Origin: Hyaloraphidium curvatum SAG 235-1
Lineage: Eukaryota; Fungi; Monoblepharomycota
Direction of reading: 5' to 3'
Assembly: GCA_025558095.1 (NCBI GenBank)
Contig: JAIVFI010000030.1
Span: 434,001 to 498,000, forward strand
Length of the DNA: 64,000 nt
This document shows positions 3,337 through 56,073 of the stretch, piece after piece. Both the position numbers and the translations under genes were made by a program. The notes beneath the pieces are model-generated. The model searched no databases. It was given only the letters and a program-made list of their open reading frames with translations, and was not told where the DNA came from. Every line of letters starts with the position of its first letter. Position 1 is the first letter of the stretch.

Positions 3337-4818
3337 TCAACCGACGGGGCAGAAGCTCTGCACTGTCGCCCTCGCCCCGGCTCCCCTCAGGATCCCAAAC
3401 AGCCCCACCGCGACCGTCACGATCGTCACGGCCGCGCCCCGCACGAAACCGAACGTCACGGGCACGCCGAACGCCGTCGCGAATTCCCGAGGTCCGGGCG
3501 CCGCGAACGCGTCCAGGACCGCGAGGTGCGATTGCGCCGCCGGCGGGGTCGGGAGGTTCCCCCGTGCGATTGAGAGGCGGATGTCCTGGGCTGCCCTTGC
3601 GTAGAGGCGGGCGTGGGCAGCGACGTGGGCGTTGCAGGATGCCCATGTCGTGGACATGTAGAGCGCGTCGACGGCGCGCCAGAGGAGAACGGCGAGGATC
3701 CAGGCGGGGGCGCAGCCGGCGCCGACGAGGGAGACAAAGAAGACGAAAACGTCGCAGAGAAAGACCACGGCGACGAGCTGGTTGTAGGCGAGGCTGGCGG
3801 CCACGCGGCTGCGCCACTTGGGCCCGAGCAGCTGGTGCAGGGCGACGTAGTCGGCCACTGCCGGCAGTGCCGTCGTACCCTCGCTGCCGAGCAAGGAAGA
3901 CGGCGGCACGCAGGCATCGATGACGCCGACGAGCGACAGCCTGATGGCCCTGACTTCGAGCCTGCCGTCGAGCCCGACGAGCGCCACGTCCGTCACCTGG
4001 TCCTCCAAGTACATCGAAAAGAGAATCACAGTCTGAGAAATTGCGACGTAGGCCATCAGGACCGCCCGCCAGGCCACCGTCCAGGTCTCGGTGGCTAGGA
4101 ACACGGCCGGCGTCCAGTAGATGAAGACGAAGTAGGTGAGGTTTCCAGCGAGCATCTGCACGACGTACCGCGTGCCACGCAGTGCTGCAGACGCGCGGGC
4201 GGCGTTGCCCCCGCACCCTGGCAGCGGACACGGGCACAGCGGGTCGCCGTCCTCGTGCCGCAGCAGCGCCGGCGGGTTGACCGCGGCACGATCGCACAGC
4301 TCCAGCCAGCGCACGAGACCGGCAAACACGCTGCCGTCCTCTGTCGGCGGGTTTTTCCACGCGGGGACGCCCTGCAGCATCAAGCCAACGTTGTACGCGG
4401 AGGTATTGAAGAGCATCACCGCGAGACCAACGGCCAGGCCGCGGACGTCAAAGAAGCCCGAGGCCAGCGCGGGCCAGTACGACGTGATGATGAGCGCGGC
4501 GGTGGGGGCGAAATACAGGAGCGTGCGGGTGACGGGCATCCGGTTGAGCCTCGGCAGCGCGGAACCGGCGGCCAGCAACCGGAGAACGCGGGACGGCAGC
4601 GCAGCCTTGACCCGCGGCAGTGTCAGAGGGTCCGCGGCGCGCGCAGAAGCGGCGGGGTCGGATTCGCAGGGGACGCGGCCGGCGAGCTCGGGCGAGAGCG
4701 GCGGCAGCAGCGCGTACGGCGCGGGTACGAGAACGAGGAGCGCAGCGTCGTCGAGAAAGGAAGGGACGGCTTCCGTGCCTCCGGACCCCGCGTCCGTCGC
4801 CATTTTCGCCAGCTCCAT
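3337..4818 (-). CDS. 7-TM membrane protein, putative 7TMIC (OR/GR-like) family, paralogue 1
   Basis: Intronless 493-aa ORF with ~7 hydrophobic segments. Family motifs LLRHEDGDPLCPCPLPGCGG, WASCN and FATAFGVPVTFGFVRGAAVTIVTVAVGLFGILR, plus a terminal QSFCP. Confidence 0.75.
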   Translation of the reverse strand: MELAKMATDAGSGGTEAVPSFLDDAALLVLVPAPYALLPPLSPELAGRVPCESDPAASARAADPLTLPRVKAALPSRVLRLLAAGSALPRLNRMPVTRTLLYFAPTAALIITSYWPALASGFFDVRGLAVGLAVMLFNTSAYNVGLMLQGVPAWKNPPTEDGSVFAGLVRWLELCDRAAVNPPALLRHEDGDPLCPCPLPGCGGNAARASAALRGTRYVVQMLAGNLTYFVFIYWTPAVFLATETWTVAWRAVLMAYVAISQTVILFSMYLEDQVTDVALVGLDGRLEVRAIRLSLVGVIDACVPPSSLLGSEGTTALPAVADYVALHQLLGPKWRSRVAASLAYNQLVAVVFLCDVFVFFVSLVGAGCAPAWILAVLLWRAVDALYMSTTWASCNAHVAAHARLYARAAQDIRLSIARGNLPTPPAAQSHLAVLDAFAAPGPREFATAFGVPVTFGFVRGAAVTIVTVAVGLFGILRGAGARATVQSFCPVG

Positions 4819-5410
4819 TCAGGGTGTGGAGCCGCGGAAGGAGAGACCGTCCAGCAGCCGCGCCGCCGCAGCGAATCGTCCAAACGGCAAAGTCCTGACG
4901 ATGAAAGAGCGCGGCTTCAAGCGGCCCGATGGTTGGCCCGACGCGGCTCTTCGCGCGCTTCGTCCGTCTGCTCGAAGCCGTTCGGCCGCCGGCAAACAAT
5001 CAGCACTACTAGACATCCATTTGGAAAGAAGACATCCATTGGTCCGTGCGCGCGCGCGCCTGCGGCTTCCCACCCTAACCAATCCCGAATCCCCAGCACC
5101 CAAAACGTTGAGATGGACGCCATGGAAGCGGATCCGTCGCCTCTTGGCCTGCAAAGGTTTCGTCGGGTGCTGCACGAAGGCCGGAAGTGAGCGTGATCCC
5201 CTGGTGACAGCATGCGCATCTCCTACGGGGCTCAATTTCGAGATCCCCACCACCCAATCTGCTGTTCAGAAAGATGGAAAGCAGTCGCCCGGGTGTTTTG
5301 GCCTGGAAATGGTTCGTAGGGTGCTGTAACTGACAAGCGGCAGGTGAACCGGGTGTCACCGGGAGCGCCGCCTCAAATCAACGGTCCCGAATCCCCGTGC
5401 CGGTGCGGAC

Positions 5411-6145
5411 ATGTTGGGCTCCGTGGGGCCTCCTGCTGGGGCGCAGTCGAAAGCAGCGCGCCAGAAAAGGAAGCTGGACGGGCGGAAGGCTCACATTTCG
5501 GGGCTTAACCGCAAGTTTGTGGAGGAGAAGAGGGATGCTAGCCTCGCGGACACCGTCGCCACCTGGCGGTCTGAGCTTCACCACGACGGCTGTACCGTGG
5601 TGGACCTGGGTTTATCCTGGCGCCAAAGGGAGAAACTCAGCCCAACAGCGCTGGGCAGGGCTGCGCGCAGGGTGGCGAAGCTCGCGGGCGACCTGTTCCA
5701 GACGTCCCTGCGCGCCAAAGACGGCTCGCTCGCAACCGATTCGGGAGATGGCCGCCGGCTGTATGGTCCCTTGGTCACGTGCGAGACTAAGGATGCTGAG
5801 TTGGAGGTCAGGGGCTCCGCCGCTGCCCGCCGCCGTGGATCACCACGTGGACGAGCATGGCAAAAAGTGGAAGCCCTCGCTCCCGGATTACATTTCGAGC
5901 TTCCGTAAAGCGGCTCCCTACCTCAAGCAGCTCGCCATGGTGGCGGACGTTGCCACAGAGCTCTGTGGCCGTGCCTTCCCGGATCTCGTTCCTGCAGACC
6001 GCTCGGTTCTCGTTTCGCTCCCGCATTAATGCGACAATCAGGAGCCTCACCTCGACGGGGATACGTCCAAATCAGCTGAGGACAAGTACCGTGTTTGCCT
6101 GAAGGACTTTGAACTGCACGGCGCAGCATGCACGGAATCCTAGCT
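5411..6145 (+). pseudogene. Degenerate 2OG-Fe(II)/PhyH-like dioxygenase fragment
   Basis: LHHDGCTVVDL N-terminal motif and SVLVSLPH*CDNQEPHLDGD (S-L-P-x-C-x-x-Q-x-x-H-x-D). Frameshift or intron near 5810-5860, in-frame TAA at 6027-6029, and no distal His. Confidence 0.35.
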
Positions 6146-7047
6146 AAGCGGAAGGAACTAATCGTTGATATGTAGATTGACCTGGCACCGAGGCGGCGTG
6201 CCTGCTTTCTGGTCCCTCCTTCCTCACATGATGGAGCACATGTCCTGCCCCCTGTTCGCTTTCATGTGCATGGCGCACAGAGGCAACGGTCCCCTGACCA
6301 TCTCCCCGTCGCAGCGCTGCCCGTTGGGCCACCGCGCGTGGCACTTGTGGCAGCAGTTGCGCCGGTAGCACACGTGGTGCGCGTCGCGGTTGCACTTGGG
6401 GCCGGAACGGGTGCCAACGGGGAAATCACACTTGTTGGTCATGGGAGAGTGGGCTGCCGGGTCGCGGTGTCGCACCCGATTCCGCGTCGGGGACGGGGCG
6501 CCACCAGTGGCAGTCGTCAGTGCCGCGGTCGGAGCCTTTGCGTAAGGGGGGCTCACGGGTCGCGCGCTTTCGTGATTCGCCTGAGGCCGCTGTTCTGCGT
6601 TTCGTGTCTCGTAGCTGAGCAGCACCGAACTTTCGAATGGTTCCTTGGAAGGTGGAGTTGAGTCAAACGCGTTTGGCTTCGACTGGCTGAGCGAACTGTG
6701 GCCGCACCGGATGTCGAGCCTACGGACCACAAAGCGGATGTGAAACATTGCTAAAGAAGGTCGGAAGCCGCACGGAGAAGCAGGGAGACCCCGGACCGGT
6801 GGCCTGGTTGCAAGCCCGTACAATGCTGCGACGGCTCAGCTGCCTGGCACGTACACTTGCCTCTTCAAGCAAATCCGGCACATCCGAACACCGGACGGGG
6901 CAGACAGCACGATCACTTCCGCCCTGATATGCTACCGACATCCGCGACCACAGCAACACCCGCACGGACGGACCCCGCACAACCCCACGGACGCGTCCCG
7001 ATAAGAATCAAGCTCGACCCTTCTTCTTTCAACTGTACACTCCCGCC

Positions 7048-8141
7048 TCACGCCCTCTGCTCCCGCTCCCGGCCTTGCCGCGGCCCGCGGTCGTCCCGGC
7101 GCTGGAACTGCTGCTGCGGCGCGGCCTCCTCGACCTTGACGCCGGGGATGGAGCCCATGCCCATGGAGTTGAGGAGGGCCTGTGAATGGGATGGGGGTTA
7201 GTGTCCGTTGTGAAAAGGGGGAAAGGGTGGAAGGGCAACAAGGGGAACCAGCCGTGACGGAACGCACGTCCCGAGGCCGACGCCCGGTCCTCTCGGCACC
7301 GAAGGCCGAGGCGAGGCAACCAGAAGCGCCGACCGCGCAGCGGCACCCTGGCCAGTCCCAAAGGTCCCCGCGTCGGGTGGATCCCCGCCCCTGCACCCTG
7401 GCCCTCCACTCCGGTACCTCGCTCCTCGACGCTACCTACCTGGGTGTCCTTGTCGATCCCGATGACCTCCATCGCCAGCGCCGACACCTCGGGGACGTAG
7501 TTGTCCTTCCTCTCCCTCTCCTCCTCCTGCAGCTTGAACGAGATGCCGCGCACGGGCCCGCGCTGGATGCGCTTCATCAGGTGCGTGGTGAAGCCGGCGA
7601 TCTGGTTGCGCAGGCGCTTCGAGGGGATGATGGCCACCTCCGAGGCGATCCGCTTGTTGGTCTGGAAGTCGAGGGTGAGGCGGGGGTAGTATCTGGAAGG
7701 TGGGGTGCCGCGGAGGTAGGAGCGGGCGGGGCAGGCGGTCAGCGCGGTCCGGCCGCGCCACGGAAGGGGCAACCCACTTCTCAATGAGAACCCTCGACGC
7801 CTTCTTGATGGTCTTTGTGCGGACGCGACCCTGTTGGGAGGCCGCCGTTCAGCATCCAGTTCGTCGTCCGGTCCCTCTGCAGCCCCGTCCCCGTCCCGTC
7901 CCTCCATCGTCCAGTACCCCGGTCCTCCCGCACGGCATCGCCAGTCCTCCCATGATGAACGGTGCCCGCAAGGCGGCGGCCGGGCCGGGTGCAGCTGGCC
8001 GCAGACCAGGCCGGCCCGCACTCCTCCTCCCGATAACCCCCGCCCCTCCCGGCCCGCCCCGCACCCTCCCGGCCCCGCAGTGCCTTCCCTGCACTCTGCC
8101 CTCTTTCACCCGCGGGCCCTCCCGGCCGCGGAACGCACCAT
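7048..8141 (-). CDS. RPS17: 40S ribosomal protein S17 (eS17), 4 exons
   Basis: ATG-only exon 8139-8141 followed by a gtgcgt donor; exons 7778-7830, 7440-7692 and 7048-7179. Spliced product [33 protein letters not shown]...[25 protein letters not shown]. Confidence 0.97.
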
Positions 8142-9899: not shown

Positions 9900-9909
9900 C
9901 GAGGACAAC
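9900..9909 (+). repeat. Left copy of candidate target-site duplication CGAGGACAAC
   Basis: Identical 10-mer at 16874-16883; the match extends to 15/17 nt. Confidence 0.55.
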
Positions 9910-9931
9910 GACCTCGCCTTTGAGCCCAAGA

Positions 9932-17061: not shown

Positions 17062-19075
17062 ATGGGGGAGACTACCGTGTTCATGAAGTTTTACCAGGAG
17101 ATTTGGGGCGCGGGAGGCCTGGCAGGCAAGCGCTTGAAGGCCCCCCCGGACTTGCCCGAAGAGTTTAGGGGCGTCCTGGACCCCGAGGTCTTCTGCGCCA
17201 GATTCTCAGCTGCCTCCGAACGAGTCCATGAATGTTACAGATACGTGCCGGGAGGCTTCGCAGCTTTCACTGCTCTTAGCATTACGGTGATCGCGACCCC
17301 AGTTTACGCTGCAGCCTTGTCCGCAGCTGCGGCGAAAGTGAAGCCCTCGTTGGCGGCCCTGGCGCACCAGTGGTCTGAGGAGGATGCGGCCATCAAGATA
17401 CGTTGGGAAGCAAACGTATTTGGCGCATACCCACCTACGATAGGGGCTACGCTGGACCCTGAGGCAAGCCGGTGCGCGGTCGCCGAAGCGCGCGAGCGGC
17501 AGGAGGCCGCCGAGGCCTGGCGCGCGGCAGGACAGGCCCGTCAGTGGCAGATGATGGAAGAACAACGACTCCGGGAGGAGGAAAGGGCCCGCTGGGCTGA
17601 GCAGGAGATGGCCCGCGTCGCCGAGCAGGAGCGCCAGCGCCAGATATGGGAGGATCAAGAGAGGCGTATTGCGGAGCAGCGGGCCGCGGAACAGCGCTTG
17701 GCCGAACAGCGTGCGGCCGAGCGGCGTGCCGCCGAACAGCGTGCCGCCGAACAGCGGATGGCCGAACAGCAGATGGCCGAGCAGCGGATGGCCGAGCAGC
17801 GGATGGCCGAACAGCGGATGGCCGAGCAGCGAGCCGCAGAACGTCGGGCGGCGGAAGCGCTCCAGGTGGCGGAAGAACAGAGGCGGCTTGCGGAGCAGGA
17901 GCGGCGCCGCGCCGAGGAACGCGAGGTGGAGCTGCGGATGATGGAGATGCGGATCAAGGAGTTGGAGCAAGGGAGGCAGAAGGATCGGTCGCAGGGTTCT
18001 GCTCGCACAGCGATCGGAACGGGTACCTCGAATCCGTTTCGCACGGGCGAAAGCGACCGTACAGCAGTGCCGGATGCTCCGCAGCGGATTGCAGCCGTGC
18101 GATCCAAGCTCCTCGTGGAACCCAACCAAGTTTCTTACACCAAGCAGAGCGTCTTGGGACAAGGCTCTTTTGGCACCGTATATCGGGGCATGCTTCGAGG
18201 ATCCACCAAGGTGGCGATCAAGACGATCAAGGGGGACGTGACGCCGCGCCTGGTAAAGATGTTCGAGGACGAGATTGCGACCTGGGAAGGGCTCAACCAG
18301 CGCAACGGTATGCACCGTCGGCGATGGCCTCCTCTTCACGCGCTGACGGCATCGACACAGTGCTGCCCCTCCTCGCCTACTGCAGCCAGCCCCCCATGAT
18401 GATCTCGGAGCTGGCCTCGGACGGAAACATGCGCGACTATCTCGAGGACAACGACTGGGACCAGAAGGCCGGCGTCAAATGCCTGCGCGGGGTCGCGGAC
18501 GGCATGGCGTACCTGCACTCGTTCAGCGTCCTCCATGGGGACCTGAAGTGCGCCAACATTATGATCGGTGGGCTTGCTGCCCAACCCGCGTCGCCCATTC
18601 TGACTGACAACCGCTCATGCAGACCACGGTATCCCCAAGATCGCCGACTTCGGCCTCGCCCGGATCCGCAGCGCGCTGACCACCAGCAAGACGCGGCGGG
18701 AAGACGAGGGAGGCCGCGCCGCGGGCGGCACCCCCGTCTTCATGGCCCCAGAGCTGTGGACGGGCAGCCGGCTCCGCCCGCCCGCGGACGTCTACGCGTT
18801 CGCGATGGTGTGCTACGAAGTCACGAGCGAGGGATACTACCCGTTCATGGGCCTCTCGGAAGCCATGGTGAGAAGGGCTGTCGGGCATCCGGTCCGCACG
18901 CGTTGACCAGCTTGTCGTGCAGCTCATGGAGGCCGTGGGCAGGGGCAGCAGGCCCGAGAGGCCTGACGACGTGGAGGAGTGGCTGTGGATCCTGATGCAG
19001 AGGGCGTGGGCGCAGGATCCCAAGGCCAGGCCGACGTTCGTGGAGATCGGCGGCGAGATGGATTGGAACATGTGA
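17062..19075 (+). CDS. TKL-type protein kinase with an N-terminal Erf4/Golgin-A7-like membrane domain and a repeat coiled-coil stalk; 4 exons
   Basis: LGQGSFGTVYRG, VAIK, HGDLKCAN, DFG, GTPVFMAPE and DVYAF, joined by introns ~18308-18360, 18568-18622 and 18868-18923. The N-terminal domain call (LPEEFRGVLDPEVF, TM, L..W) is tentative. Confidence 0.88.
17671..17856 (+). repeat. 15-bp coding tandem repeat (AEQRA/AEQRM, ~12 copies)
   Basis: GCCGA(A/G)CAGCGG(ATG/GCC)-type units, visible directly. Confidence 0.9.
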
Positions 19076-19152: not shown

Positions 19153-20846
19153 TCATCCGGGGCAGATGGACTGCAGGGTGACGAACATGCTTCCCCGGAA
19201 GACGGTGAACAGTCCGACCCCCACCGTGAACACCGTGATCACTTGCGGACGAATCAGTGAGCCTGCTCTCCCTCCGCGCGCGGGGGAACCCACCAAACGT
19301 CCGCACGACCCCGAAATCCACCGGGAACCCCCCGAACCTCACCCTGCTCTTCTCGATCTCGGCCGCGCACGCGTCCAGCAGGCCGTCGTGCGCGTCCAGC
19401 TCCTCCAGCAGCCCTTGGCGGCCCTGTGGGTCCGTCCAGCCCGATGGATCGGCGCGGGCCAGCTCGACGCGGAGCCCGCGGAGGCGGCGTCGCGCGGCGG
19501 AGTAGAGGACCGAGACGTCGGTGATCTGCCCGTTGGAGACGGCGAAGATGGCCAGATCGGCGACGAGGAGGGCGAGGACGTTGCCGACGACGGCGAGCTG
19601 CCAGGCGCAGATGCAGGAGCCGGCGGCCTGCATGGGCGGGGAGCGAGGGTCAGCCAGCGCGGTTTCGGGGAACGATAGTGGGACGCACGTAGTTGATGAT
19701 CCCGACGACGAACGTCCAGCTGGTCATGGCAAAGTAGGTCATGGCCAGGAACAGGTTGCTGCTCACCCTCTGCTTGAACAGGTGCGCCAGGTGCGCGTGG
19801 AGCTCCGCGTACAGATCCGGATCCGGCGCCTCCCCCTGCCCCCGCGCGAGCGTGCGCTTGGTCCTCGCCGCGGTCTCGAGGTGCGCCACGAGGGAGGTCA
19901 TGGCGATGCGGGTGGCGCGGCGGTACATGCGCAGGGAGAGGCCGAAGGAGGCCGAGGTGGGGCAGTGCCGCACGCGGGTGAGGAGGAGCTCCGTGGTGAT
20001 GTACAGCACCGAGGTGATGGCCCAGAGGGTGCCGATGAGGGCGGACCAGGGGCGGGTCCAGAAGGCGCCGCCGAGGGTGACGACTAGCGAGTACTGCGAG
20101 AAGAAGTTGAGGGCGGCAAAGACGGCGGTCTGGAAGAGGCAGTCCACGAAGGGCAGGATCTGGATCCCGCGGACCAGCCCGCCGCCGCACGACGCGCGCG
20201 GGCAGGGGCACGTGGCGTCGCCGTCGTCGTGCGCGAGCAGCCGCCCGCCGGGAGCTTCGGAGCACAGCTCGACCCACCGCACGAACGGCGCCGCGGCGAC
20301 GGTGTCCAGGTCGCCGTTGGGGTCCATGCGGCGGATGGTGCCGTTGACGAGGAAGATGAGGATGGCAGACAGGACGGTGAAGGCGTTGGCGACGGTGCCG
20401 GCGGCGAGTTGCCTCGCGGGATAGACCCCGCCCGCCTCGGCGTTGACGTAAATCGTGAGGAAGACCATGACGGCGGATAGGCAGTACGGGGGCAGCGACG
20501 CCAGCAGCGGCCTCGCCAGGAGAGGCAGGAACAGGGAGCGGAAGCGGGACCACCAGTAGAACACGGGCGCCCTGGCGCGGAAGGCGGCGTCCATGCTCGC
20601 GGGCGTCAGCGGGCGCTCGGCGCGGCGGGCGGCGGCGGGGTCGGGGATCGGCCGGCGCAGCTTCAGCTCGTCCGTCACGATGTGCTCGGCGGGGAACATG
20701 GCGAGCCATTCGGCCTCCGAAAAGGCCGACGCTGGTTGCGAGGTGAGGGTGCCGCCGTCGCTGGTGGTCGTTGCGCCGGCGGTCTCGCCATCGTCGTCGG
20801 CCTTGGCGTCCAACTCCCACGCGGCGACGTCGAGCGCGATGGCCAT
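19153..20846 (-). CDS. 7-TM membrane protein, putative 7TMIC family, paralogue 2; 3 exons
   Basis: ATG 20846; introns 19628-19688 and ~19242-19293. Motifs LLAHDDGDATCPCPRASCGG, FAVSN and RVRFGGFPVDFGVVRTFVITVFTVGVGLFTVFR, plus a terminal QSICPG. Confidence 0.75.
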
Positions 20847-24315: not shown

Positions 24316-24319
24316 CTAG

Positions 24320-26649: not shown

Positions 26650-27071
26650 GCGACTGGATTCGGGGCAGTTTGAACTTTGCTTACTGTAGCAGTGCATTAC
26701 CCTGATCTTTGTGAATCAACCTGTACAGGAATGTCTGGATTGCGGGAATGAGAAACGGTGGCTCTGTTAGTACGCCGAGAGATGCAGCTAATTCGTGGTA
26801 CGATGGGTCGGATTCTGTCACGGAGCGCCGCCGCCGCCGAGAGACCGAGACCGGGTCTGCCAAGGCGACGGTACGTGGAGAGTTTGCGGTCCTCTCATCG
26901 GGCTTGCCCGGGGTCTGCGCCTGCTTAATGGCGCGGCGAGGACGTCCGCCTTCGTCACCGGGGACCGCAGCTCGTGCTCCGAAAATGCGCGTGACTTTTC
27001 GGAACGGCGCGGATCTTCTTGGACAAAGGCGAAAGCTCACCCTTCAAAAGGCTAATGTTAGATCCTGTCCT

Positions 27072-27258
27072 AGGCACCTAATGACCAAACATCACCCAAT
27101 TTACCACCGCTCTTCGGCGCCTTTCCTATCCGCTGCGCGATCTCGTTGCCCGGGGCCTGCGCCTGCTTAATGGCGCGGCCTCGTTCACCTTTAGGGTACG
27201 CTGTTCCAGCGTACGTGGACGAGCGGCTACTGCACGATCTCGTCCCTGTCGGCCACGG
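27072..27258 (-). pseudogene. Remnant of the 3' end of the 29382-31346 F-box gene, with an internal insertion
   Basis: ggcacctaatgaccaaacatcacc...ctcttcggcgcct...gatct.gtccctgtcggccacgg matches 29354-29443. Confidence 0.7.
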
Positions 27259-27362: not shown

Positions 27363-28901
27363 TCAGGCACCGCGCGGCGGACACACGAGATCCCCGGCCA
27401 ACACCACCCCCAGGTTCCTGAGCACGCTCCAAAGCCCGATCCCCAGCGTCACCGCCGTCACCAGCAGCGTGCGCACGGTGCCGAAGGTTACCACAAACCC
27501 TAGGAACCTAGCGCGGTATCGGTCCGCGTCGGTGAACCCTGCCAGCACGTCCACGTCGGCCTCGATTGCGGCAAGGAGCGCCGGGTCCGCGGGTTCTGCA
27601 GCCGGGGCGGAGGTCAGCTCGCGCCGGAGGGAGGCGAGTTCGGATGCGGCGTCGAGGTACAGAGCGCGGATGTCGGAGACGAGGTCGTTGGAGGCGGCGA
27701 CGTGCACGAGGTCGGTCAGCAGGTGGGCGACGAGGATGTACCCGAGGTAGCCCAGGTAGAGCGCGGGGAGGCATCCACCGACGGCCATGCTGACCAGGGC
27801 GAAAATGACGGCGGTGGATACAGGTATGATCATGGGGGAAGTCGTGCTGTACCCCCGGATGCGGTTGCGCCAGGTGCGCGACAGCAGGCTGTGCAAGTCC
27901 ATGTAACCCGCGCGCTCCCGCCGCGCGGAGCCGGGCCAGGCGGCAATCTTAGCGTCCGCAGCCTCGCGGTACCGCTGCACCATCGGGGTGAGGGCGAGCT
28001 TCATGGCGCGACGGGTCACGCGGCGTGAGAGCTGCAAGAGGGGGAGGTTCGTCGAGAAGCGCCCAAAGGCCAGCGGGACACCGAGTGCAAGAGCCAGGAG
28101 CATGTACAGCGCTATGAGGAAGGCCGACCAGGGGGTGGCCCAGATCCGGGGCGACATGGGGGGGAAGATGGCCAAGGCCGCGATGGTCAGTACGAGGTAA
28201 AGCAGAAAAATGACGAGCTTGTACGAGGCCTCCCCAAAGCGTGCGACGCCGGCCAACCACGGAAGACGGCCTGCACACGACACCGCGGGGCACGGGCAGA
28301 GGTCGTCCTTGGGGTCGTGCTTCAGCAGCGCGACCTCCTCGCCATTGGCACCGGCGCCGCCACGGGACACAAGCTGCAACCAGCGTGCCATCCCCGCGGC
28401 GCCGTGCGTCGAGACGTCGCCTGCGGCTGACTGCCGATCCTGCGTACTGCCGCCCGCGACGGCAAAGCTGCTCCGGTAGGCCGCGAACAGCGCCAGGCCA
28501 AGCGTTCCGGCGAACACGAGGAGTAGGTATCCAACGAGTCCCACGACCAGCTGCGCCGTGCCGTAGTATCCGTCCTCGAAGACGCAGAACGCGGGCACGG
28601 GGATAACGTTTGCCATGAACTGCACCGTGAACCGCACGAGCGGCCTTCGCGTCGGCTGCAGGGCGGCCTGGAGCCGCACGGCCGCGGCCATCGCGGGTGC
28701 CTTCGGTTCCAGCGCCGCGATAAGCACGCGCAAATCGAGCGGGGACTCTCTCCGGGCGTCCGCCGCAGGGTCCGGAGCCGCGCCGAGGCCGAGCTCGGTC
28801 GCGCCGCCGAAGACCCCGGGCGGCGCGGGGAGGACCGCGAGCCATTCCGCGCCTTGGAGGAAGAACGGCCGCGGCGCCACGTCGGTCTTGTCCTCCTCCA
28901 T
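27363..28901 (-). CDS. 7-TM membrane protein, putative 7TMIC family, paralogue 3
   Basis: ATG 28901; seven hydrophobic segments. Motifs LLKHDPKDDLCPCPAVSCAG, VAASN and RARFLGFVVTFGTVRTLLVTAVTLGIGLWSVLR, plus a terminal DLVCP. Confidence 0.78.
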   Translation of the reverse strand: MEEDKTDVAPRPFFLQGAEWLAVLPAPPGVFGGATELGLGAAPDPAADARRESPLDLRVLIAALEPKAPAMAAAVRLQAALQPTRRPLVRFTVQFMANVIPVPAFCVFEDGYYGTAQLVVGLVGYLLLVFAGTLGLALFAAYRSSFAVAGGSTQDRQSAAGDVSTHGAAGMARWLQLVSRGGAGANGEEVALLKHDPKDDLCPCPAVSCAGRLPWLAGVARFGEASYKLVIFLLYLVLTIAALAIFPPMSPRIWATPWSAFLIALYMLLALALGVPLAFGRFSTNLPLLQLSRRVTRRAMKLALTPMVQRYREAADAKIAAWPGSARRERAGYMDLHSLLSRTWRNRIRGYSTTSPMIIPVSTAVIFALVSMAVGGCLPALYLGYLGYILVAHLLTDLVHVAASNDLVSDIRALYLDAASELASLRRELTSAPAAEPADPALLAAIEADVDVLAGFTDADRYRARFLGFVVTFGTVRTLLVTAVTLGIGLWSVLRNLGVVLAGDLVCPPRGA

Positions 28902-29381
28902 GGTCGCCCTGCGCGACGGAAGTGGGGGGCAAACCGATCGTCCAACGCGATCGCGTCTGCGACCCCCACGCATGTAGCACCCATCACGTTTTTGGCAGCG
29001 AACGCAAAGAGCGTCGGGAACAGCTCAGAGGAACACATTGCGGTCCGTGGGGTGCCGAGAAAACCGGTAGTTTGAGCGCGGCTTGTTTTCGACCGGAGGC
29101 GCCGCCGACAGGTTTGGCGGAGCGTAGACTGAGGAACGACGTCAGAGCGCAGCCAATCCCATTGACGCCTGCGTACTTAGTCAATGCCCTTGCTGGGAAA
29201 GGGCAGGGGATGGAAGTTGCTGTGGCTTGGAGCGAAGCGGCCACAAGCTGGCCGCAAGCGCACACACCGTACGGCTGCCCCGGCGTTGTGGTCTTTTCGC
29301 GCTAAGAAGCTCAATCTCTCTAAGAACGGACTCACAGACGGACTCACAGACGAGGCACCTAATGACCAAACATCACCGAAT

Positions 29382-31346
29382 CTACCACCTGCTCTTCGGC
29401 GCCTCCCCCGTCTGTTGTGCGATCTTGTCCCTGTCGGCCACGGAGCACAGCAGAGTCACATTGGGCGCATCGAGCAGCTCTATCTTGTCCCAGAGCCCTG
29501 CGAGGAGCGTCCGCCTGTGCGCCGGACCCATCCGCGCTGCCATGTCAGCGCCCATGATGTCGGGATGGTCCAACAGAGCCGCAGAGACGGGTTCGGAAGT
29601 CGGGGCAGCCCAAGTCCAGGAGATGGCGTCCGGGAGGGCGGAGATGGGGAGGATTTTGCTGCCCAGGGCGTGGCCAAAGACGAAGGAACGGACGTCGCCA
29701 TAAAGTTCGAAGCTGGCTGCAATTGCGGAGACAACCCTGCACACCGTGCGCAGCGAGAAGGTCTCGCGGTACGAGGCAAGCACACCAAGGAGGGCGAAGC
29801 AGGTATTGCGGTGGTACAGCGGCACCAGTGTGCGCAGGAAGGAGGACGCGAGGGCTGCAAGAGCCCCCGCCCGCTCCACGTACGTCTTGATCATGCGCTG
29901 AGGGTTCTTTTCGAACCGTCCCTCGAGCTCCGAAAGCTTCCACGTGACGAGGTGGTTCACGGCGTTGCCGAAGCGCTCGCGGAAGACGCTGTCAGAGCAG
30001 CTGGGGAGCTGATCATGCGCGACCCAAGCAAGCATTTCCCCGATCTCCGACGCGGAAAAACTGGATTCCGTTCCGTATCGCTTCTTTGGGAACCAATCCA
30101 TCGAAACTGCGGGGGTCCCGAGGAGGGCGACAAAGTTCGCGAGATCGCGGACGTCAAAGTCTACGCCGCCGATGAGCGCAGCGAAGCGCTCCTTTTGCTC
30201 TGCAATGCCATAGTCACTTATGGCCGTCAAGTAGTCGCGGCATGGAAGCGGATGGGCACGGAAAAAGCGGGCGACCCTAGAGATGTCGACAACCCGGTCA
30301 TTGAGCATCACGTTGACGAGAAGATCCTTGGTGGCCGCGTCTCGTGCTAGAAAATCGAGAGCCTGGAGACCCGCGGTCGTCGGCCAAAGCTCATCTACGA
30401 AAAAGAGATCTGCTGGGTCGTCGAGATCTTCGTCAAGAAGCCCGCGCCGCAACCCGGAAAAGAACGATTTGCGATCCGTCTCGGCGACTGCCTGTCCGGC
30501 CGGCGTTTCGACAAAGAACCGGCGGAGGAAGGTCGCGATCGTCTCGTCTGGATCTTCGTCTGCCGTATCGTTGGCCGCATTGGCATATTCCGCAACGATT
30601 CGGCCTCGGTCCGACCACTTCCAGGGGCAAAGATTCACCACCGCCGGAAGAGAGCCGTTCTCCCACTGGTAAACCAGGGACCCGATCGCCTCCGCGTAAA
30701 GGTGAGGATCATCCAAGTTTTCGAAGAAGAACCTCAATCCTTCGCGCACTTCCGGCCCCGGCTCCGGGTCCTCAGGCACCCAGTTTGGCGTCCACCAACC
30801 CTGGAGCAGAGCAATCGCGTTCCATTTCTCCGCAAAAGACGGCGAATCGAGGTCCAAAAGAACGCGACACAAGTCCGAGCGCGGTAGGCCCGTGGCGAGA
30901 AGGAACATGACCGAATCCTCCGAGCGGCCCCACACCCGGGAAAGCAACCTCTCCGAGTCCACGATGGCGCGAAGCACGCCCGGCCGCACGCGGGCCCCAA
31001 AGAACAGCAATCCGCGCTCCTCGGGAGTGGGTGCAACGCGGCGAGCAACCTCGACGCAGAAGAGGGAATCCGCCTTGGCCCCGCAGAGCACCAGGAGCCG
31101 CCCCACCGCGTCCGGTTCAAGGCAGAGGCGCCCGAGACGCGCCTGCCCGGTGCTTCGGATACGACGTATCACGTCTGCAAACTTGACTGATTCGTAGTTC
31201 TCGAACAGAGGGCGAAGGCGAGCCGCGAAGTCTGGCGACGCCAACGCCCTCAGCTGCCGGCAAAGGTACCGGCAGAAGTATAGGTCCTCGGCAGACAGGT
31301 GCGAGACCACATGGAGCAGCACTTCCGGAAGCAGACGGTCCAGCAT
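29382..31346 (-). CDS. F-box protein, paralogue of 21263-23396
   Basis: MLDRLLPEVLLHVVSHLSAEDLYFCRYLCR. Shared blocks FLLATGLP, LLQGWW, W.NGSLPAVVN.CPW and SAS..GE. Ends before the full UBA-like tail. Confidence 0.85.
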   Translation of the reverse strand: MLDRLLPEVLLHVVSHLSAEDLYFCRYLCRQLRALASPDFAARLRPLFENYESVKFADVIRRIRSTGQARLGRLCLEPDAVGRLLVLCGAKADSLFCVEVARRVAPTPEERGLLFFGARVRPGVLRAIVDSERLLSRVWGRSEDSVMFLLATGLPRSDLCRVLLDLDSPSFAEKWNAIALLQGWWTPNWVPEDPEPGPEVREGLRFFFENLDDPHLYAEAIGSLVYQWENGSLPAVVNLCPWKWSDRGRIVAEYANAANDTADEDPDETIATFLRRFFVETPAGQAVAETDRKSFFSGLRRGLLDEDLDDPADLFFVDELWPTTAGLQALDFLARDAATKDLLVNVMLNDRVVDISRVARFFRAHPLPCRDYLTAISDYGIAEQKERFAALIGGVDFDVRDLANFVALLGTPAVSMDWFPKKRYGTESSFSASEIGEMLAWVAHDQLPSCSDSVFRERFGNAVNHLVTWKLSELEGRFEKNPQRMIKTYVERAGALAALASSFLRTLVPLYHRNTCFALLGVLASYRETFSLRTVCRVVSAIAASFELYGDVRSFVFGHALGSKILPISALPDAISWTWAAPTSEPVSAALLDHPDIMGADMAARMGPAHRRTLLAGLWDKIELLDAPNVTLLCSVADRDKIAQQTGEAPKSRW

Positions 31347-48403: not shown

Positions 48404-48424
48404 GTGACATGACTATAATCTAGT

Positions 48425-49457: not shown

Positions 49458-51923
49458 ATGGAAACCCGCCGCGGCCGCCGCATCGCCGCCCGGCCCGATG
49501 CACCCGTGTTTGTCGCGGCCACGCCGACGCTCGCGGGCCTCCCGCTCGAGACGCGCGCGGCGGTGCTCGGACTGCTCGTGGACCGCGGTGACCTCTGCGC
49601 GGCGTGGAAGGCCGCCTCCGCGTGCCGGTCGCTGATGCTCGCGTTCAAGGCGATGCCGCTGTGGGCGCGTTTGGCGGCGAAGCACGGCTGGAAGCCCCGC
49701 GGGAAGGCGGCACCGGACGACGCGCTGGCGGTCGGCAAGATCCGTGCGGCCAAGAAGCACCTCTGCCACACGTGCTTTGCGCTCGACGACGTCTGCTACT
49801 TCGTGCAAGTCGAGCTCGGCGTGTTCCGCCGCTTCTGCGAGTCGTGCGCCGCGGGCATCTGGAAGGCATTCCCGTTCGTTCGCGAGGCTTCGAAGGCCGC
49901 CCCGGCTGCCCCGACGATCATCCTGGCCGGCGTAGGGAACCTGTTTTCATACTCGGTGCAAGAGGAGTGGAAGATGTTCGGCGGCCGGGAAGGGCGTATC
50001 GCGAGGTACCGCGCCGAGGAACAGCGAATCCGGACGGCGGCGGAGAAGTACGCCCGCACGAAGCTGCGCGAGATCGCCAAGGAGCTCGGCATCGAGGCCC
50101 CATGGGACGAGGAGGCAGCGAGCAAGGTCACGGTGACCCACAGTTCCAACCACATCGACGTCGGGCGGCAGATCGTTTCGGTCCTCGCCACCGAGGCCGC
50201 TGTGCAGGAGCTCAAGCTCGGCGTGTTCCGTCCCAAGCTCAGGTTCCCCGAAGCGGCGTTCGAAGCGGAACGCCTGCGCGTCGGACACCTCGAAGCCCGC
50301 TGGCTCGAGCAGCAGAAGATCCGCAAAGCCGAACACGCGGCCCGAGACGCAGAGGCGTGGAACGCCCTCGTGGAAATCCTCGGACCGGCGCCGCAGCTCC
50401 CGGCATTCGCGCACCAGTTCGTCGTGGAGTGCCTGCGGAGGAAGGAAGGGCTCAAGCCGGAGCTCGTTAAGCGGGTGCTGTGCATCGAGAAGCTTCTAGA
50501 TGCTGCCGGGGTCACGGACGAGGTGCGGGCCGGTCTGCCTGGATTATGGGAGCGCGAGACCCGTGCCGTTTCTCTCTTCGTGGACATGCGCGTCTCTCCT
50601 GGCCCGGATCAATCCTTCTCGTGTCTTTCGGAGGGGGAACTCGGCTTCCTCCCGGATCCCGTCCGCTCCGCGATCGACGCCGCCATCATCTCGCGCCGCT
50701 TTCCCGCTGTGGAGGCCGAGCTGGGAGCTGTGCTGCAGGCTGCAGTGCGGAACGAGCCCGGGACCGCCCAGGTCCGCTCGTGGTTCTCTGCGGCCCCCTC
50801 GGCAGACGACGTGCTCGCGCTGCTTTCGGAACCCCTGCGCCGCGTATTCGCTTCAAACACCGCCGACGTCGACGAAGTTGCCGCGCGCGCAATCGACGTC
50901 CGCGGCCACGCCGAGGTGGTCGACGTCCTGGGGTCGCTGTCTCCCGCCGTGCTCGCCCATGCCTTGCTCCCGTGCGCCAAGGACTCCAACGAGTCGATGG
51001 ACAAGGCCTGCGCCGCGGTGCAGCACGCCCTGGGGCCGGAGTTCCCGCGCTTCGTCACCGACCAGGCCTTCGATTCGCTCCCTCCCTCCACTTTGGACGC
51101 CGTGGCAAGCGAGGCGGCCGGGCTGTGGATCGCTGGCCACGGGTGCGAGCTACCGGAAGCCGCCGCCGCGGGCAGCCCGGCCAGGGTCAAGGTGCTCCAA
51201 GCGATACATGCACGAGTCCGAAAGGAGCTCGAGGAAGCGCTGCGCGCGGCGGGGACAGCGACTGCCCAAGAAGAGCTCGCCGACGACGGGATCGACAAGA
51301 ACGCGCTCAAAGCCTTCGAAAGAAACCTGTCCCAGTTTCCTGCAAGGGAAGCAGGCGAGCTGAGGGAGATTTGGGAAGCTGCCTATGTCACGGCCGTGCT
51401 CGACCAGGCCAGAGAGGCGCTGCTGGCGGCCGGGAGGGCGCTGCCGTCGACGCAGCCCGCCTTCTTCGCGGTGGCGGACCCGGAGCTGGCGCGCAAGTTC
51501 CGCCTGGCCTTGGGCATGCCCGGGGCTGCGCGGGTCGCGGAGTGGCCTGTCGAAGGAGGGCCGGCGTGGCGCCGCCGTGTCGCGGAAGAAGCTGCCAGGC
51601 ACGATTCGCGGATCAACAACCTGGTGGCGTCCCTCCCGCTGGACCAGCTGCGCCAGGTCGGTTCGGTTCCCGCGGAGCTGCTCCCCCGCCTCGGACTGGC
51701 GGCGCCCAGCCTGGGAGCGGACCTCATGTGGCGGCAGACGGTTGCGCGCAGGTTCCTCCGCGAGAGGCGCGCCGGCACCGATCTGTCGGCGTTTGCCGAA
51801 GCCGTGGAGGAGCTCGCGATTGATGCTCCCGGCTCGGAGGGCTGCGCCAGGTGCGGGTTCTACAGGAGCAAGGGGGCGCCTACCGAGTTCGTGAGACGGA
51901 ACCATGTGTGCACGAGAGCGTGA
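49458..51923 (+). CDS. F-box-like protein with a CxxC...CxxC zinc motif, intronless, 821 aa
   Basis: LAGLPLETRAAVLGLL..ACRSL...PLWARL; CHTC and CESC; terminal CARC..H.C. Confidence 0.65.
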   Translation: METRRGRRIAARPDAPVFVAATPTLAGLPLETRAAVLGLLVDRGDLCAAWKAASACRSLMLAFKAMPLWARLAAKHGWKPRGKAAPDDALAVGKIRAAKKHLCHTCFALDDVCYFVQVELGVFRRFCESCAAGIWKAFPFVREASKAAPAAPTIILAGVGNLFSYSVQEEWKMFGGREGRIARYRAEEQRIRTAAEKYARTKLREIAKELGIEAPWDEEAASKVTVTHSSNHIDVGRQIVSVLATEAAVQELKLGVFRPKLRFPEAAFEAERLRVGHLEARWLEQQKIRKAEHAARDAEAWNALVEILGPAPQLPAFAHQFVVECLRRKEGLKPELVKRVLCIEKLLDAAGVTDEVRAGLPGLWERETRAVSLFVDMRVSPGPDQSFSCLSEGELGFLPDPVRSAIDAAIISRRFPAVEAELGAVLQAAVRNEPGTAQVRSWFSAAPSADDVLALLSEPLRRVFASNTADVDEVAARAIDVRGHAEVVDVLGSLSPAVLAHALLPCAKDSNESMDKACAAVQHALGPEFPRFVTDQAFDSLPPSTLDAVASEAAGLWIAGHGCELPEAAAAGSPARVKVLQAIHARVRKELEEALRAAGTATAQEELADDGIDKNALKAFERNLSQFPAREAGELREIWEAAYVTAVLDQAREALLAAGRALPSTQPAFFAVADPELARKFRLALGMPGAARVAEWPVEGGPAWRRRVAEEAARHDSRINNLVASLPLDQLRQVGSVPAELLPRLGLAAPSLGADLMWRQTVARRFLRERRAGTDLSAFAEAVEELAIDAPGSEGCARCGFYRSKGAPTEFVRRNHVCTRA

Positions 51924-52137
51924 TCGTGTGGGGTCGGCAAGGCGGCGTCGTGGGAACGGAGTTCCAGCACATGTGACTCTGAAGACGGATCGATGGGAAG
52001 CTGAACGAATTCGGCCGAAGGCAGTAGGATGTTCATCATTTGCGGACTTTGAAACTCCGTGACAGCCCGCGGTGGTGCAGCACGCCACTCTGCGCGTCCC
52101 GCATCCGCTCCCGCATCTCACTCCACGCCCCGCCGCG

Positions 52138-53295
52138 ATGCGCGTCACCTTCCTCGGCACGAGCAGCGGCACGCCAACGCGGCACCGCAACGTCTCCTCG
52201 ATTGCCGTCCACGACCTCGAGCGCTCGTCCGACGTCCTGCTGTTCGATTGCGGCGAGGGCACGCAGCACCGCTTCCTGGCGCCGGAATGCCCCGCAAACA
52301 CCTCCAAATTGTCGCACGTGTTCATTTCCCACCTACATGGAGATCACTGCTTCGGGCTGCCGGGGCTGCTGGCCTCGATGAGCATGGCCGGAGGCAGACC
52401 CGGCGGTGGGGAAGCACCGGCAGCGGAGGACGGGGTGCCGGAACCGGGCCGCACGGTGCGGATATTCGGACCGGTCGGTCTGAAATTCATGCTCAGGACA
52501 GCGTTGGGGCTCAGCGAGACTGGGTTGGGGTTCAATCTCGGGATTTCGGAGTTGGTCCCACGGGACACGACTTCCGAGGCAGTGGAGCAGTACCGGGCGT
52601 CCTTGCCCCCCCCATTGCCGTACGAGACAGGCGCGCAGGCAGATTGGATGGTGTTTTTCGACGAGGAAAGGGGCTGCTACCCGGCTTTCTGCCGCGTGGC
52701 CGGAAGCTACGTCGTCAGCGCCGCTCCTTTAGCCCACCGAATCGCTAGCTTCGGCTTCCTGATTGCCGAGGACCCCTTGCCGGGCAAGCTGGATGCCGCC
52801 AAGTGCGATGCCCTTGGCGTGCCCAGGGGCAAGCTGCTCTCGGAGCTCAAGTCCGGCCGCGACGTCGTGCTCCCTGACGGACGCGAGGTCCGGGCTGCGG
52901 AAGTGCTCGGCCCTTCGCAGCCCGGGCGCCGGATCGTCATCCTTGGTGACACGTGCGACAGCTCGCAGATGGCCGGGCTGGCCGCGGACTGCGACCTCAT
53001 GACCCACGAAGCCACGCTTGAGGACGGGATGGAGGCGCTCGCGGTCGAACGGGGCCACAGCACGCCGTCGATGGCCGCGAAGTTCGCGGCGTCGGTGGGC
53101 TGCCAGAGGCTGGTGCTCACGCACTTTTCGGCGCGGTACCTGCCGCCGTCCAAGGCAGGGGACGGGCAGCCGAGCACGGCGATCTTGCTGGACCAGGCGC
53201 GGGAGGCGGCCGATCGGGAGGGGGCGAGGGCGATGGTGGTCACGGCGGCGGAGGACTTTGCTTCGATCAAGGTTCCGAGGCGGCATCCTACGTAG
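52138..53295 (+). CDS. Ribonuclease Z, short form (ELAC1/tRNase ZS)
   Basis: MRVTFLGTSSGTP..RN, LFDCGEGTQ, SHLHGDH, exosite PGKLD..LGVP.G, GDT, HEAT, HST and LTHFSARY. Confidence 0.93.
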   Translation: MRVTFLGTSSGTPTRHRNVSSIAVHDLERSSDVLLFDCGEGTQHRFLAPECPANTSKLSHVFISHLHGDHCFGLPGLLASMSMAGGRPGGGEAPAAEDGVPEPGRTVRIFGPVGLKFMLRTALGLSETGLGFNLGISELVPRDTTSEAVEQYRASLPPPLPYETGAQADWMVFFDEERGCYPAFCRVAGSYVVSAAPLAHRIASFGFLIAEDPLPGKLDAAKCDALGVPRGKLLSELKSGRDVVLPDGREVRAAEVLGPSQPGRRIVILGDTCDSSQMAGLAADCDLMTHEATLEDGMEALAVERGHSTPSMAAKFAASVGCQRLVLTHFSARYLPPSKAGDGQPSTAILLDQAREAADREGARAMVVTAAEDFASIKVPRRHPT

Positions 53296-53476
53296 ATTGT
53301 CCCGTGTTGAAGTCGCACATATTCCACGCCAGTTTTGGGGGCGGCCGACGCGGGAGACATTACGCCATTCCTCGCACCTCACCCCTGCCACCTCGCTCGC
53401 TGGCCCACCGGGTCCCCTGCTCCTGGTTCTCGGAGCCGAAGCCGCACCAAGCGAAGCATCTCGCCACTGCGCCGCG

Positions 53477-54694
53477 ATGGCCCCCGTGCCCGAAGAGCGC
53501 CCGACCGATGCGGCGCCGTCCAAGGACTTTTCCGAGATTCCCATCCTGGACTACGAGCTGTCGCTCACCGACCGGCCAAAGTTTCTGGAACAGCTGCGAC
53601 ACGCGCTTCACGTCGTTGGGTTCATGTACCTGAAGAACGCGCCCGGCTTCTCGGCCGAGGACCAGGAGCGGCTGTTCCGGCTCGCCCATACCTTCTTCGA
53701 AGACGTGCCGCTCGAGACGCGGATGAAGTACCACGAGGACGAGCACTTCCACGGGTTCCTGCCGCCCAAGAACACGCAGCTCATCCAGTGGCTCCACTAC
53801 TCGTACGGTCACCCGCCGCACGACCGCAACGACGAGTCGGTGCCCTTCATCCGCCGAGTCATCGACGGGCACAACATCTGGCCCGACGAGCCCGAGGTCG
53901 CGGGGTTCCAGGAGGCGTACGAGCGGCACCTCGCCAACTGCGATGCCCTGAACCGGTTCCTGCAGCGCTCCGTGGCCGAGATGCTCGGCTTGCCGCAGGA
54001 CTCGTTCGACAAGTACTTCTGGGGGCCAAACGGGGAGCGCCTGGGCTTTGCTTCCGTGCGCCTGATCCACTACACGCCCTACGACGAGGCCGCCGAGGAG
54101 AGGCAGAAGCGCATGGTCCGCTCCGACGACGGCAAGCCGCTCTCCCTCCCCGCGCACCGCGACAGTACCGCTTCGTTCACACTGCTGATCAACGACGACG
54201 ACGGACTCGAGGTGCTGAACCACTCCGGCAGGTGGATTCGGGCGCCGCCGCTCGCGGGGCACGTTGTGGTCAACATCGGGATGCCAATGAGCATACTCAC
54301 GGACGGGTACCTGGTCGCCACGCTGCACAGGGTCGATTCGACGCTGGCAAAGGGGAAGCGGATGTCGATCCCGTGCTTCCTGTCCCCCGATCCGACAGCG
54401 ACGCTGGTGCCGCTGGGGAGCTTCGGGAGGAAGGAGCTAGGGGACGCGGTTGAGGCGTCGATTGCGCACCAGTCGAACCCGCTGAACCTGAAGAGCTGGA
54501 ACGCGCTGGACACGGGGAGGAGGATCCTTTACCAGGTTGGTTGCTCGCTCGGCTTCTTCGCCAAACGAAAACGCTCACAATGCTGATCGTCTCAGCGCCG
54601 AATCAACCATGCGAACACTTTCCTGAAGCACTGGCCCGAGCTGGCCAACGAAATCGATGCTGAGCTCGGGGACACGGTGCGGATCAGCGACTAG
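53477..54694 (+). CDS. 2OG-Fe(II) dioxygenase (IPNS/DIOX_N family); 2 exons
   Basis: IPILDY, VGFMYL, NIWP, AHRD, VVNIG, TLHRV and RMS; intron ~54536-54595. Confidence 0.9.
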
Positions 54695-54896
54695 CCTGTT
54701 AGGCGTGAGCGCGTTCGAAATGTGTTCAATGTTCAAAAGTGTGGTCCTCGTGTCATACACTACGCTGTTTTGCCTTACAGGAGGTCGTTGCTGGCATCGA
54801 GGTGTGTTGGAAGTCCAAGGGCCGGCGCCCCCCATTCTTGTCCTTGCCCCGCGTCTCCCAAACCCAAATCCCGCGATACGGTTCAAGTTGCCAATA

Positions 54897-56073
54897 ATGG
54901 AGCTCTCTACCCACACAGAGGCCGCAGAGCGCGGCGACGGCGTGTCGGAAAACCTACCCGTATCTTTCCTTTCCGGCGACGAGCTCCTCTGTCTCCTGCC
55001 CGCTCCCGTGGCCCTGTCGGCCGGAATCGGCGAGCCTGCGCCCGAGGATCCCGCAGAGGCAGCCCGAAGCGCGCGTCCGCTGACGGCGGCGGCCGTGCTG
55101 GAGGCCGTGGCGGCCGCTGGGGACCCGCTGTTGCAATGGTACACGCGCACATCGCTCGCGTTGGCGCCCTACGCGGCGCGGGGAAGACTCCGTATCGGCC
55201 TGAACCACTTTTCGAATATCCTCTTGATGATTCCTTTCCTCTGGATTGCCGGGATCCCTCACGGCTTTGGCCGGAAGCAGCTCGCCGCCACCACCGCAGT
55301 GCTCGTTTGGGAATGCCTCGTCTACTCCTTTCTCGCCACGAACATCGGTTGGTTCGTGGGACGTCGAGGCGCACAACGATCGGCTCCACAGACGGACAAG
55401 ACTCGGGCTGTACCGGGGGGGTTTTTGGTCGTCGCCACGCTCGACTCCTGGCCCGAGTCGGCTTTCTGGAGATACTTCCTTCTCCGCCAATCCGAGGATC
55501 CCATTCTCCCCCGTCAGTCCGATGACCCCGCGATGTTGCAGAGGAAGCTCACAGGGCAGCTTTTTCTCGAGCACGACGAGCGAGGCGGATCAGACTGCTG
55601 CTGCCCTCGCAAGTCGTGCGCGGGCTCCCTCGCGTCTCATGCTGGTGTTGTGCGCACGGTCAATCTTTGCGTCGTTCTGACTGCGCTCATGTTCATGTAC
55701 GTGGCAAGGTTCTTCACGGTCTTCGTCACCCTGGGAGGTCAAATGTGGACATCTGCATGGGCGGTTGCTGGCGTGATATTGATCCTGCTCTGCTTCAACA
55801 ACGAGCCGCCTTCCATGTTTGGTGGCAGTAATTTTACGGACAATCTTGCCGCAAGGGAGCTTGAACGGAGGCTCGAGTTTCGCGCTGTGCATCGGTCGTT
55901 GGAGGCGCTCGTTGCGCATTTTCGGAGCCTTGTACAAGGATCTTGCAAGGACGCTGTGGCCAGTTGCGAAACCTGGTATTCGTCTTTGGTGCCTTTGCTC
56001 GCTGTTTGCGATATGGACGGTGCTCCGGGCCATGGGCGTCGTGCTGACCATGGATTTGGTGTGCCCGGCATAG
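54897..56073 (+). pseudogene. 7-TM family paralogue 4, internally deleted
   Basis: N-terminal motifs and FLEHDERGGSDCCCPRKSCAG present. Near 56000 the sequence jumps out of frame to the family C-terminus (LFAIWTVLRAMGVVLTMDLVCPA*), so TM5-TM7a are missing. Confidence 0.75.

What the first reader, a model, noticed from the sequence alone, without database searches (positions are those of the whole stretch)
3337..56073. Expanded 7-TM family with insect odorant/gustatory-receptor-like (7TMIC) topology: four copies in 64 kb
Seen: paralogues at 3337-4818, 19153-20846, 27363-28901 and 54897-56073. They share a long N-terminus without a signal peptide (LPAP...DPA..AR...PL), TM pairs linked by short loops, and long loops after TM2, TM4 and TM6. 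They have A-x-x-N at the end of TM6 and a C-terminal F-x-G-F-x-V-x-F-G-x-V-R...T...GL(W/F)..(L/F)R segment. Known: insect OR/GR channels, plant DUF3537 and protist/chytrid GRLs have an N-in 7-TM fold with long intracellular loops and a split TM7a/7b preceded by a beta-hairpin-like G-F/G-x-F motif. Inference: a lineage-specific chemoreceptor-like ion-channel repertoire. The copies are highly diverged and dispersed, implying a large genome-wide family.
Basis: partly seen in the sequence, partly recalled or inferred. Interest (0 to 1): 0.82.

Follow-up and report, generated by a model that had tools for sequence, protein, structure and literature searches.

The report
Huge insect-smell-receptor-like family in fungus
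The non-swimming freshwater fungus Hyaloraphidium curvatum has roughly 450-600 genes, four of them in this window (three intact, one broken), for membrane proteins predicted to be shaped like insect smell and taste receptor channels, a repertoire far larger than the 1-12 genes reported for other non-animals in the papers read.

The parts
3337..4818 (-). Copy 1: intact intronless 7TMIC-fold gene, 493 aa (the database model P0031 covers only residues 94-493)
   Evidence: TM3-to-C-terminus model and fold search
19689..20846 (-). Copy 2 exon 1 (N-terminus to TM5, 386 codons)
   Evidence: identical to residues 1-386 of database protein P0043
19628..19688 (-). Copy 2 intron 1 (GT-AG, 61 nt, phase 0)
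   Evidence: spliced out in an RNA contig of run X1
19294..19627 (-). Copy 2 exon 2 (EL3, TM6, IL3, TM7a)
19242..19293 (-). Copy 2 intron 2 (52 nt, phase 1, AAG acceptor)
   Evidence: spliced out in an RNA contig of run X1
19153..19241 (-). Copy 2 exon 3 (TM7b, C-terminal Cys, stop)
27363..28901 (-). Copy 3: intact intronless gene, 512 aa, the modelled reference (the database model P0035 starts at residue 171)
28275..28319 (-). IL1 motif H-x6-C-x-C-x4-C of copy 3 (H195, C202, C204, C209), each 99% conserved; candidate cytoplasmic Zn site
   Evidence: 124/126 full-length members carry the relaxed motif; metal binding is inferred
27771..27773 (-). C377 in extracellular loop 3 of copy 3 (99% conserved), candidate disulfide partner of C507
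   Evidence: short strands 377-379 and 500-502 in the model; bond inferred
27381..27383 (-). C507 in the extracellular C-terminal tail of copy 3 (97% conserved)
27414..27485 (-). TM7b of copy 3 (residues 473-496), the most conserved helix, with an R-x4-T-x2-T-x3-G-x2-S-x2-R stripe; candidate pore lining
54897..55988 (+). Copy 4, 5' part (N-terminus to IL2); broken gene, TM5 to mid-TM7b missing
56002..56073 (+). Copy 4, out-of-frame remnant of the second half of TM7b and the C-terminal Cys
   Evidence: HMM 473-495, E 5e-6; 62-70% identical to tails of family members
27072..27146 (.). Downstream copy of a 76-bp, 86% identical direct repeat flanking copy 3
29353..29428 (.). Upstream copy of the same direct repeat (likely trace of a tandem duplication)

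Best explanation
These are members of a Hyaloraphidium-lineage radiation (about 450-600 genes) of 7TMIC-fold membrane proteins. Most likely they work as insect ORs/GRs do: subunits assemble through the cytoplasmic anchor (TM4-6 extensions and TM7a), the conserved Thr/Thr/Gly/Ser face of TM7b lines a shared central ion pore, and each paralogue has a different small-molecule pocket between TM1-TM6 whose occupancy gates the pore. The family would be a chemical-sensing repertoire that triggers ion signalling. Shown: genes, copy number, splicing of one copy, purifying selection, conservation pattern. Predicted: topology and fold. Inferred: oligomer, pore, ligand pocket, Zn site in IL1, EL3-to-tail disulfide. 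Variability peaks in the middle and inner half of the membrane under a conserved outer rim, so ligands may enter from the bilayer or cytosol rather than from outside.
Confidence: 0.55

Rival explanations
1. 7TMIC-fold proteins used as non-self or danger receptors: a diversified repertoire that detects microbial, parasite or algal molecules and opens a Ca2+ channel leading to defence or cell death. Same biochemistry as the best explanation, different purpose.
For: Hundreds of dispersed, birth-and-death copies with broken members and tandem remnants in a non-motile cell resemble immune-receptor expansions (my knowledge).
Against: The exposed outer rim is the conserved part and the variable sites are buried, which fits small ligands better than proteins or glycans; no recent burst of near-identical copies (median best non-self identity 40%).
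Confidence: 0.15
2. The fold has been repurposed for solute uptake or sensing of intracellular/lipid ligands: the variable polar cavity through the TM1-6 bundle is a substrate path, making the family a set of permeases or transceptors rather than ligand-gated channels.
For: Hypervariable polar positions run from mid-membrane to the cytoplasmic side (entropy 1.75 in the outer quarter against 2.3 in the inner half); an osmotrophic plankton cell would benefit from many uptake systems (inference).
Against: No transporter fold ranks near the ORs over the full length; TM7b keeps a conserved polar stripe separate from the variable cavity; no 7TMIC is known to transport in the papers read.
Confidence: 0.15
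3. Structural convergence: an unrelated 7-TM family that only resembles 7TMICs through long helical bundles.
Against: Matches run collinearly over TM0-TM7b (300-350 residues), every OR/GR type in the PDB ranks at or near the top, TM above 0.5 to DUF3537, and split TM7, anchor and loop pattern agree.
Confidence: 0.1
4. A neutral or selfish amplification (passenger of a mobile element) with no need for many functional variants.
For: Mostly intronless and dispersed; some broken copies; 6 of 52 loci have flanking direct repeats.
Against: No shared flanking element among 52 loci; dN/dS about 0.3; invariant residues across copies only 30-40% identical; spliced transcript; two repeats are clearly remnants of the gene's own 3' end.
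Confidence: 0.05

Closest known systems
Insect odorant and gustatory receptors (Orco 6C70, MhOR5 7LIC, AgamOR28, ApisOR5, Gr43a, Gr64a, BmGr9)
   Same: N-in 7-TM topology, amphipathic helix before TM1, long TM4-6 anchor helices, split TM7, conserved TM7b and anchor with variable TM1-6, very large birth-and-death repertoire.
   Different: 5-12% identity; 65-residue conserved N-terminal extension; 77-residue IL1 with His/Cys motif; invariant Cys pair in EL3 and tail; no (T/S)Yhhhhh(Q/K/E)(F/L/M) motif; variability centred deeper in the membrane; mostly intronless; no co-receptor identified.
Plant DUF3537 (PF12056), Class-A 7TMICs
   Same: Predicted fold, TM 0.54/0.62 over 366 residues; TM7 animal motif also unrecognisable there (PMC7746228).
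   Different: No Pfam hit in 50 members; plants have 4-12 genes (PMC7746228), this fungus hundreds.
Chytrid and protist GRLs (Spizellomyces SpunGRL1/SpalGRL1, Thecamonas, Vitrella)
   Different: One gene per Spizellomyces species and six in the two protists (PMC7746228); none appears among the hits identified by name here; orthology not tested.
PHTF-like Class-B 7TMICs (PF12129)
   Same: Class B is defined structurally by a long IL1, which this family also has; similar Z against Orco (11.8-12.9 for PHTF).
   Different: No PHTF Pfam match (the latter without a positive control); no PHTF-labelled cluster among the Atlas shape hits. Class A or B is unresolved.

Membership tests
7TMIC superfamily (Benton and Himmel criteria) | Seven predicted TM segments | tested here: met
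   Alignment-averaged hydropathy shows seven peaks and the model seven membrane helices; single-sequence counts vary 4-8; DeepTMHMM not available
7TMIC superfamily (Benton and Himmel criteria) | Intracellular N-terminus, extracellular C-terminus | tested here: met
   Positive-inside rule: N-terminal segment and long loops 1.1-1.3 K/R per 10 aa, EL2 0.40, EL3 0.06, tail 0.34 (EL1 0.94 is the exception); no signal peptide. Computational only
7TMIC superfamily (Benton and Himmel criteria) | Intracellular loops longer than extracellular | tested here: met
   IL 72-77 aa, EL 8-10 aa
7TMIC superfamily (Benton and Himmel criteria) | TM4, TM5, TM6 extend into a cytoplasmic anchor | tested here: met
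   Helices 257-317, 327-375, 380-431 in the model
7TMIC superfamily (Benton and Himmel criteria) | TM7 split into TM7a and TM7b | tested here: met
   Helix 440-462, short hairpin around G468, helix 473-496
7TMIC superfamily (Benton and Himmel criteria) | TM-score above 0.5 to known members | tested here: inconclusive
   0.54/0.62 to a DUF3537 model but Foldseek-alignment TM only 0.24-0.42 to OR/GR structures
7TMIC superfamily (Benton and Himmel criteria) | N-terminal re-entrant TM0 helix | tested here: inconclusive
   Helix 69-81 precedes TM1 and alignments to ORs start there; coordinates not available to check membrane re-entry
7TMIC superfamily (Benton and Himmel criteria) | Family-wide sequence profile link (PSI-BLAST network) | tested here: inconclusive
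   No Pfam or PDB profile hit; only the best 150 of 475 library hits were visible; no HHsearch against 7TMIC profiles possible
7TMIC superfamily (Benton and Himmel criteria) | OR-like tetramer with TM7b-lined pore; ion-channel activity | not testable with these tools
   No multimer prediction or assay; only the conserved polar TM7b stripe
Animal GR/GRL (narrow sense) | TM7 motif (T/S)Yhhhhh(Q/K/E)(F/L/M) | tested here: not met
   0 of 150 members; not filed as animal GRL
DUF3537 (PF12056) | Pfam profile match | tested here: not met
   genome-wide search empty without positive control
PHTF / Class-B 7TMIC | Long IL1 and PHTF1-2_N profile | tested here: inconclusive
   IL1 is 77 aa; PF12129 not matched
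GPCR / rhodopsin-like 7TM | N-out topology and GPCR fold | tested here: not met
   N-in charge pattern; no GPCR among the top 50 of either wide search

The most novel reading that the evidence does not exclude
A fungus independently evolved an insect-scale repertoire (about 500) of ligand-gated 7TMIC ion channels, of a new structural subtype with a zinc-bound cytoplasmic module and a disulfide-capped outer face, whose diversified pockets are loaded from the membrane or cytosol; it gives a non-motile single cell combinatorial chemical sensing without neurons.
Probability: 0.4. Interest if true: 0.9.

Novelty: new variant of a known kind. Interest (0 to 1): 0.76.

Why it matters
The function of 7TMICs outside insects is an open question, and the non-animal cases in the papers read are small families (1 gene per chytrid, 6 in two protists, 4-12 in plants). 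About 500 diverged, conserved paralogues in a 32-Mb genome is a second, independent radiation of this fold on the scale of insect odorant receptors, in a cultured organism with no flagellum and an unknown lifestyle. Most genes are intronless and about 1.5 kb, so they are easy to express. They allow a direct test of whether ligand-gated channel activity is ancestral to the superfamily, and they point to unknown chemical ecology. All database entries checked are 'hypothetical protein', and the models of copies 1 and 3 are truncated.

Tried and rejected
Pfam (5 pieces and 50 members) and PDB sequence profile: nothing significant. ESM Atlas by features: best 0.84, below the reliable range. Word-based protein search: recovered only 4-5 family members, so too insensitive to argue absence. 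PHTF and DUF3537 genome searches were empty but had no positive control. Mobile-element carriage: no shared flanking sequence or upstream motif, rejected. Intron rescue of copy 4: no suitable donor site and 146 profile positions are missing, rejected. Foldseek on the TM3-to-end fragment was uninformative. Supplement of the 2023 preprint held only a resource table, so its hit list could not be checked for Hyaloraphidium. Copy 2 was searched exon by exon by reference; I left out any search with a joined model of my own (database protein P0043 happens to match it).

Full report
Source. The window is G000:C30:434001-498000 of a 31.9-Mb, 55-contig assembly, about 65% GC, with spliceosomal introns. 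Nineteen of twenty family proteins looked up are GenBank 'hypothetical protein' entries of Hyaloraphidium curvatum, and pieces of copies 1, 2 and 3 are 100% identical to proteins from the same search. H. curvatum is a non-flagellated, early-diverging fungus of unclear lifestyle allied to Monoblepharidomycetes (PMC6899921, PMC8371127).

Observation. Copy 1 (4818-3337, minus) and copy 3 (28901-27363, minus) are intronless ORFs of 493 and 512 aa. Copy 2 (20846-19153, minus) has two introns that I read from the sequence; a contig of run X1 skips exactly these 61 and 52 bases, so this copy is transcribed and spliced. Copy 4 (54897-56073, plus) matches family HMM positions 13-326 and then, in another frame, 473-495: TM5 to mid-TM7b is deleted and the frame is shifted. 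It is a broken copy unless the assembly is wrong, which I did not check with reads. The four are 28-35% identical, far above shuffled scores, and they are the only family members in the window.

Family size. Each of four genome searches returned 86-125 matches from 390-740 first-look candidates, of which only the best were scored. A profile of 50 members found 475 proteins at E up to 0.001 (415 up to 1e-10) among 1.84 billion 50%-identity representatives; only the best 150 were visible, and 19 of 20 sampled were from this species. The exact pattern H-D-x-x-D-x-x-C-P-C occurs 119 times with 0 in the control and is present in 17-31% of known members, which gives 390-700. D-x-x-C-x-C-x4-C occurs 402 times with 51 in the control and is present in 57-76% of members, which gives 460-610. 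About 450-600 loci, broken copies included, is my estimate. Copies lie on nearly all contigs; 13 of 60 loci have another copy within 1.3 kb. Six of 52 loci are flanked by direct repeats against 0 of 39 control positions, and two of these repeats are the gene's own 3' end, which points to tandem duplication and loss. No common flanking element was found. The radiation is old: median best non-self identity 40%, long terminal branches, dS 0.7-1.3 for the closest pairs with dN/dS 0.24-0.40 (rough Nei-Gojobori values near saturation). One relative from another organism (54% GC metagenome contigs, 50-54% protein identity, no DNA match in this genome) nests inside the family, so the expansion predates that split.

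Conservation pattern. In 150 non-redundant members TM7b is the most conserved helix (0.61), then the IL1 core, N-terminal extension, TM7a and anchor helices (0.35-0.47), while TM1-6 are the least conserved (0.28-0.35). Every helix has a significant polar face. In TM1-6 this face coincides with the most variable positions (3-65 degrees apart); in TM7b it is the conserved face (175 degrees), formed by T482, T485, G489 and S/G/T492. Lipid-facing positions would be variable but hydrophobic, so variable-and-polar positions most likely point into the bundle. This is the pattern of a fixed pore with diversified pockets, as described for ORs (10.1101/2023.08.30.555482). One difference: variability is lowest in the outer quarter of the helices (entropy 1.75) and highest in the inner half (2.3), and the outer rim carries conserved F113, W254, W258 and C377. 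The pocket may be deeper or open to lipid or cytosol; I had no coordinates to check this.

Features not described for 7TMICs in the papers read. IL1 has H195, C202, C204 and C209 at 99% conservation, with R173 and D199 at 94-95%: four ligands on the cytoplasmic side suggest a Zn site. From my own knowledge, C-x-C-x4-C-x-G resembles the post-SET zinc motif; this is a resemblance, not a test. C377 (EL3, 99%) and C507 (tail, 97%) are both outside in the N-in topology and the model has short strands at 377-379 and 500-502, which fits a disulfide and supports the topology. The animal TM7 motif is absent in all 150.

Mechanism. Most likely (0.55): oligomeric ligand-gated ion channels with paralogue-specific pockets, used for chemical sensing. 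Rivals: the same channels used as non-self or danger receptors (0.15), transporters or transceptors (0.15), convergent fold (0.10), neutral amplification (0.05). I put 7TMIC-fold membership at about 0.88. No function was tested.

Comparison and novelty. The superfamily is known, including single genes in Spizellomyces chytrids, six each in Thecamonas and Vitrella and 4-12 in plants (PMC7746228). Neither that paper nor the 2023 tree-of-life screen mentions Hyaloraphidium in its text, and searches for '7TMIC' and for Hyaloraphidium with receptor and expansion found no description. I could not inspect the screen's data tables, so a listing there, or larger expansions in other protists, is not excluded. 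Class A or B is open: the best named shape match is DUF3537 (Class A) while the long IL1 is a Class B trait. Verdict: a new variant of a known kind, interest 0.76. Other readers and two follow-up agents of this scan reported the same family on other DNA of this genome; I saw those notes after my own fold and count results and treat them as agreement, not as evidence.

Noticed in passing
window 27072-27146 and 29353-29428; also 26904-26937 / 27146-27179: Copy 3 lies between 76-bp direct repeats (86%); about 100 bp downstream of it also match (91%) the upstream flank of family locus L026, which itself has an inverted copy downstream: possibly a small dispersed repeat.
   Followed up: partly
L005 (G000:C43:319780-324267): A family gene is sandwiched between two polyubiquitin-like arrays in inverted orientation, one ending about 130 bp upstream of the ATG (recognised from the ubiquitin C-terminal coding sequence).
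   Followed up: no
L061:1-1220 and L062:237-1208: Family member in metagenome contigs (ENA ERZ28593542, JGI 3300043314 and 3300050339), 54% GC, with a frameshift and in one assembly a premature stop, next to a SNF2-like gene whose best match here is 60% identical: an unsequenced Hyaloraphidium-like organism.
   Followed up: partly
database models P0031 and P0035 (window 3337-4818 and 27363-28901): The public protein models of copies 1 and 3 are N-terminally truncated (start at residues 94 and 171), as many short family entries appear to be; topology predictors would miss them.
   Followed up: yes
G000:C1:1447054, C2:357778, C2:415788, C7:695826: A near-identical 33-bp match to the Cys pattern with an in-frame stop recurs on several contigs: a repeated element unrelated to this family, slightly inflating the count.
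   Followed up: no
window 17653-17871: Array of 15-bp coding repeats (about 14 units) in the gene next to copy 2.
   Followed up: no
G000:C30:60676-61653 and C48:16225-17202; C10:808383-809069 and 813128-813814: Pairs of family matches with identical scores: very recent duplications or duplicated assembly segments.
   Followed up: no
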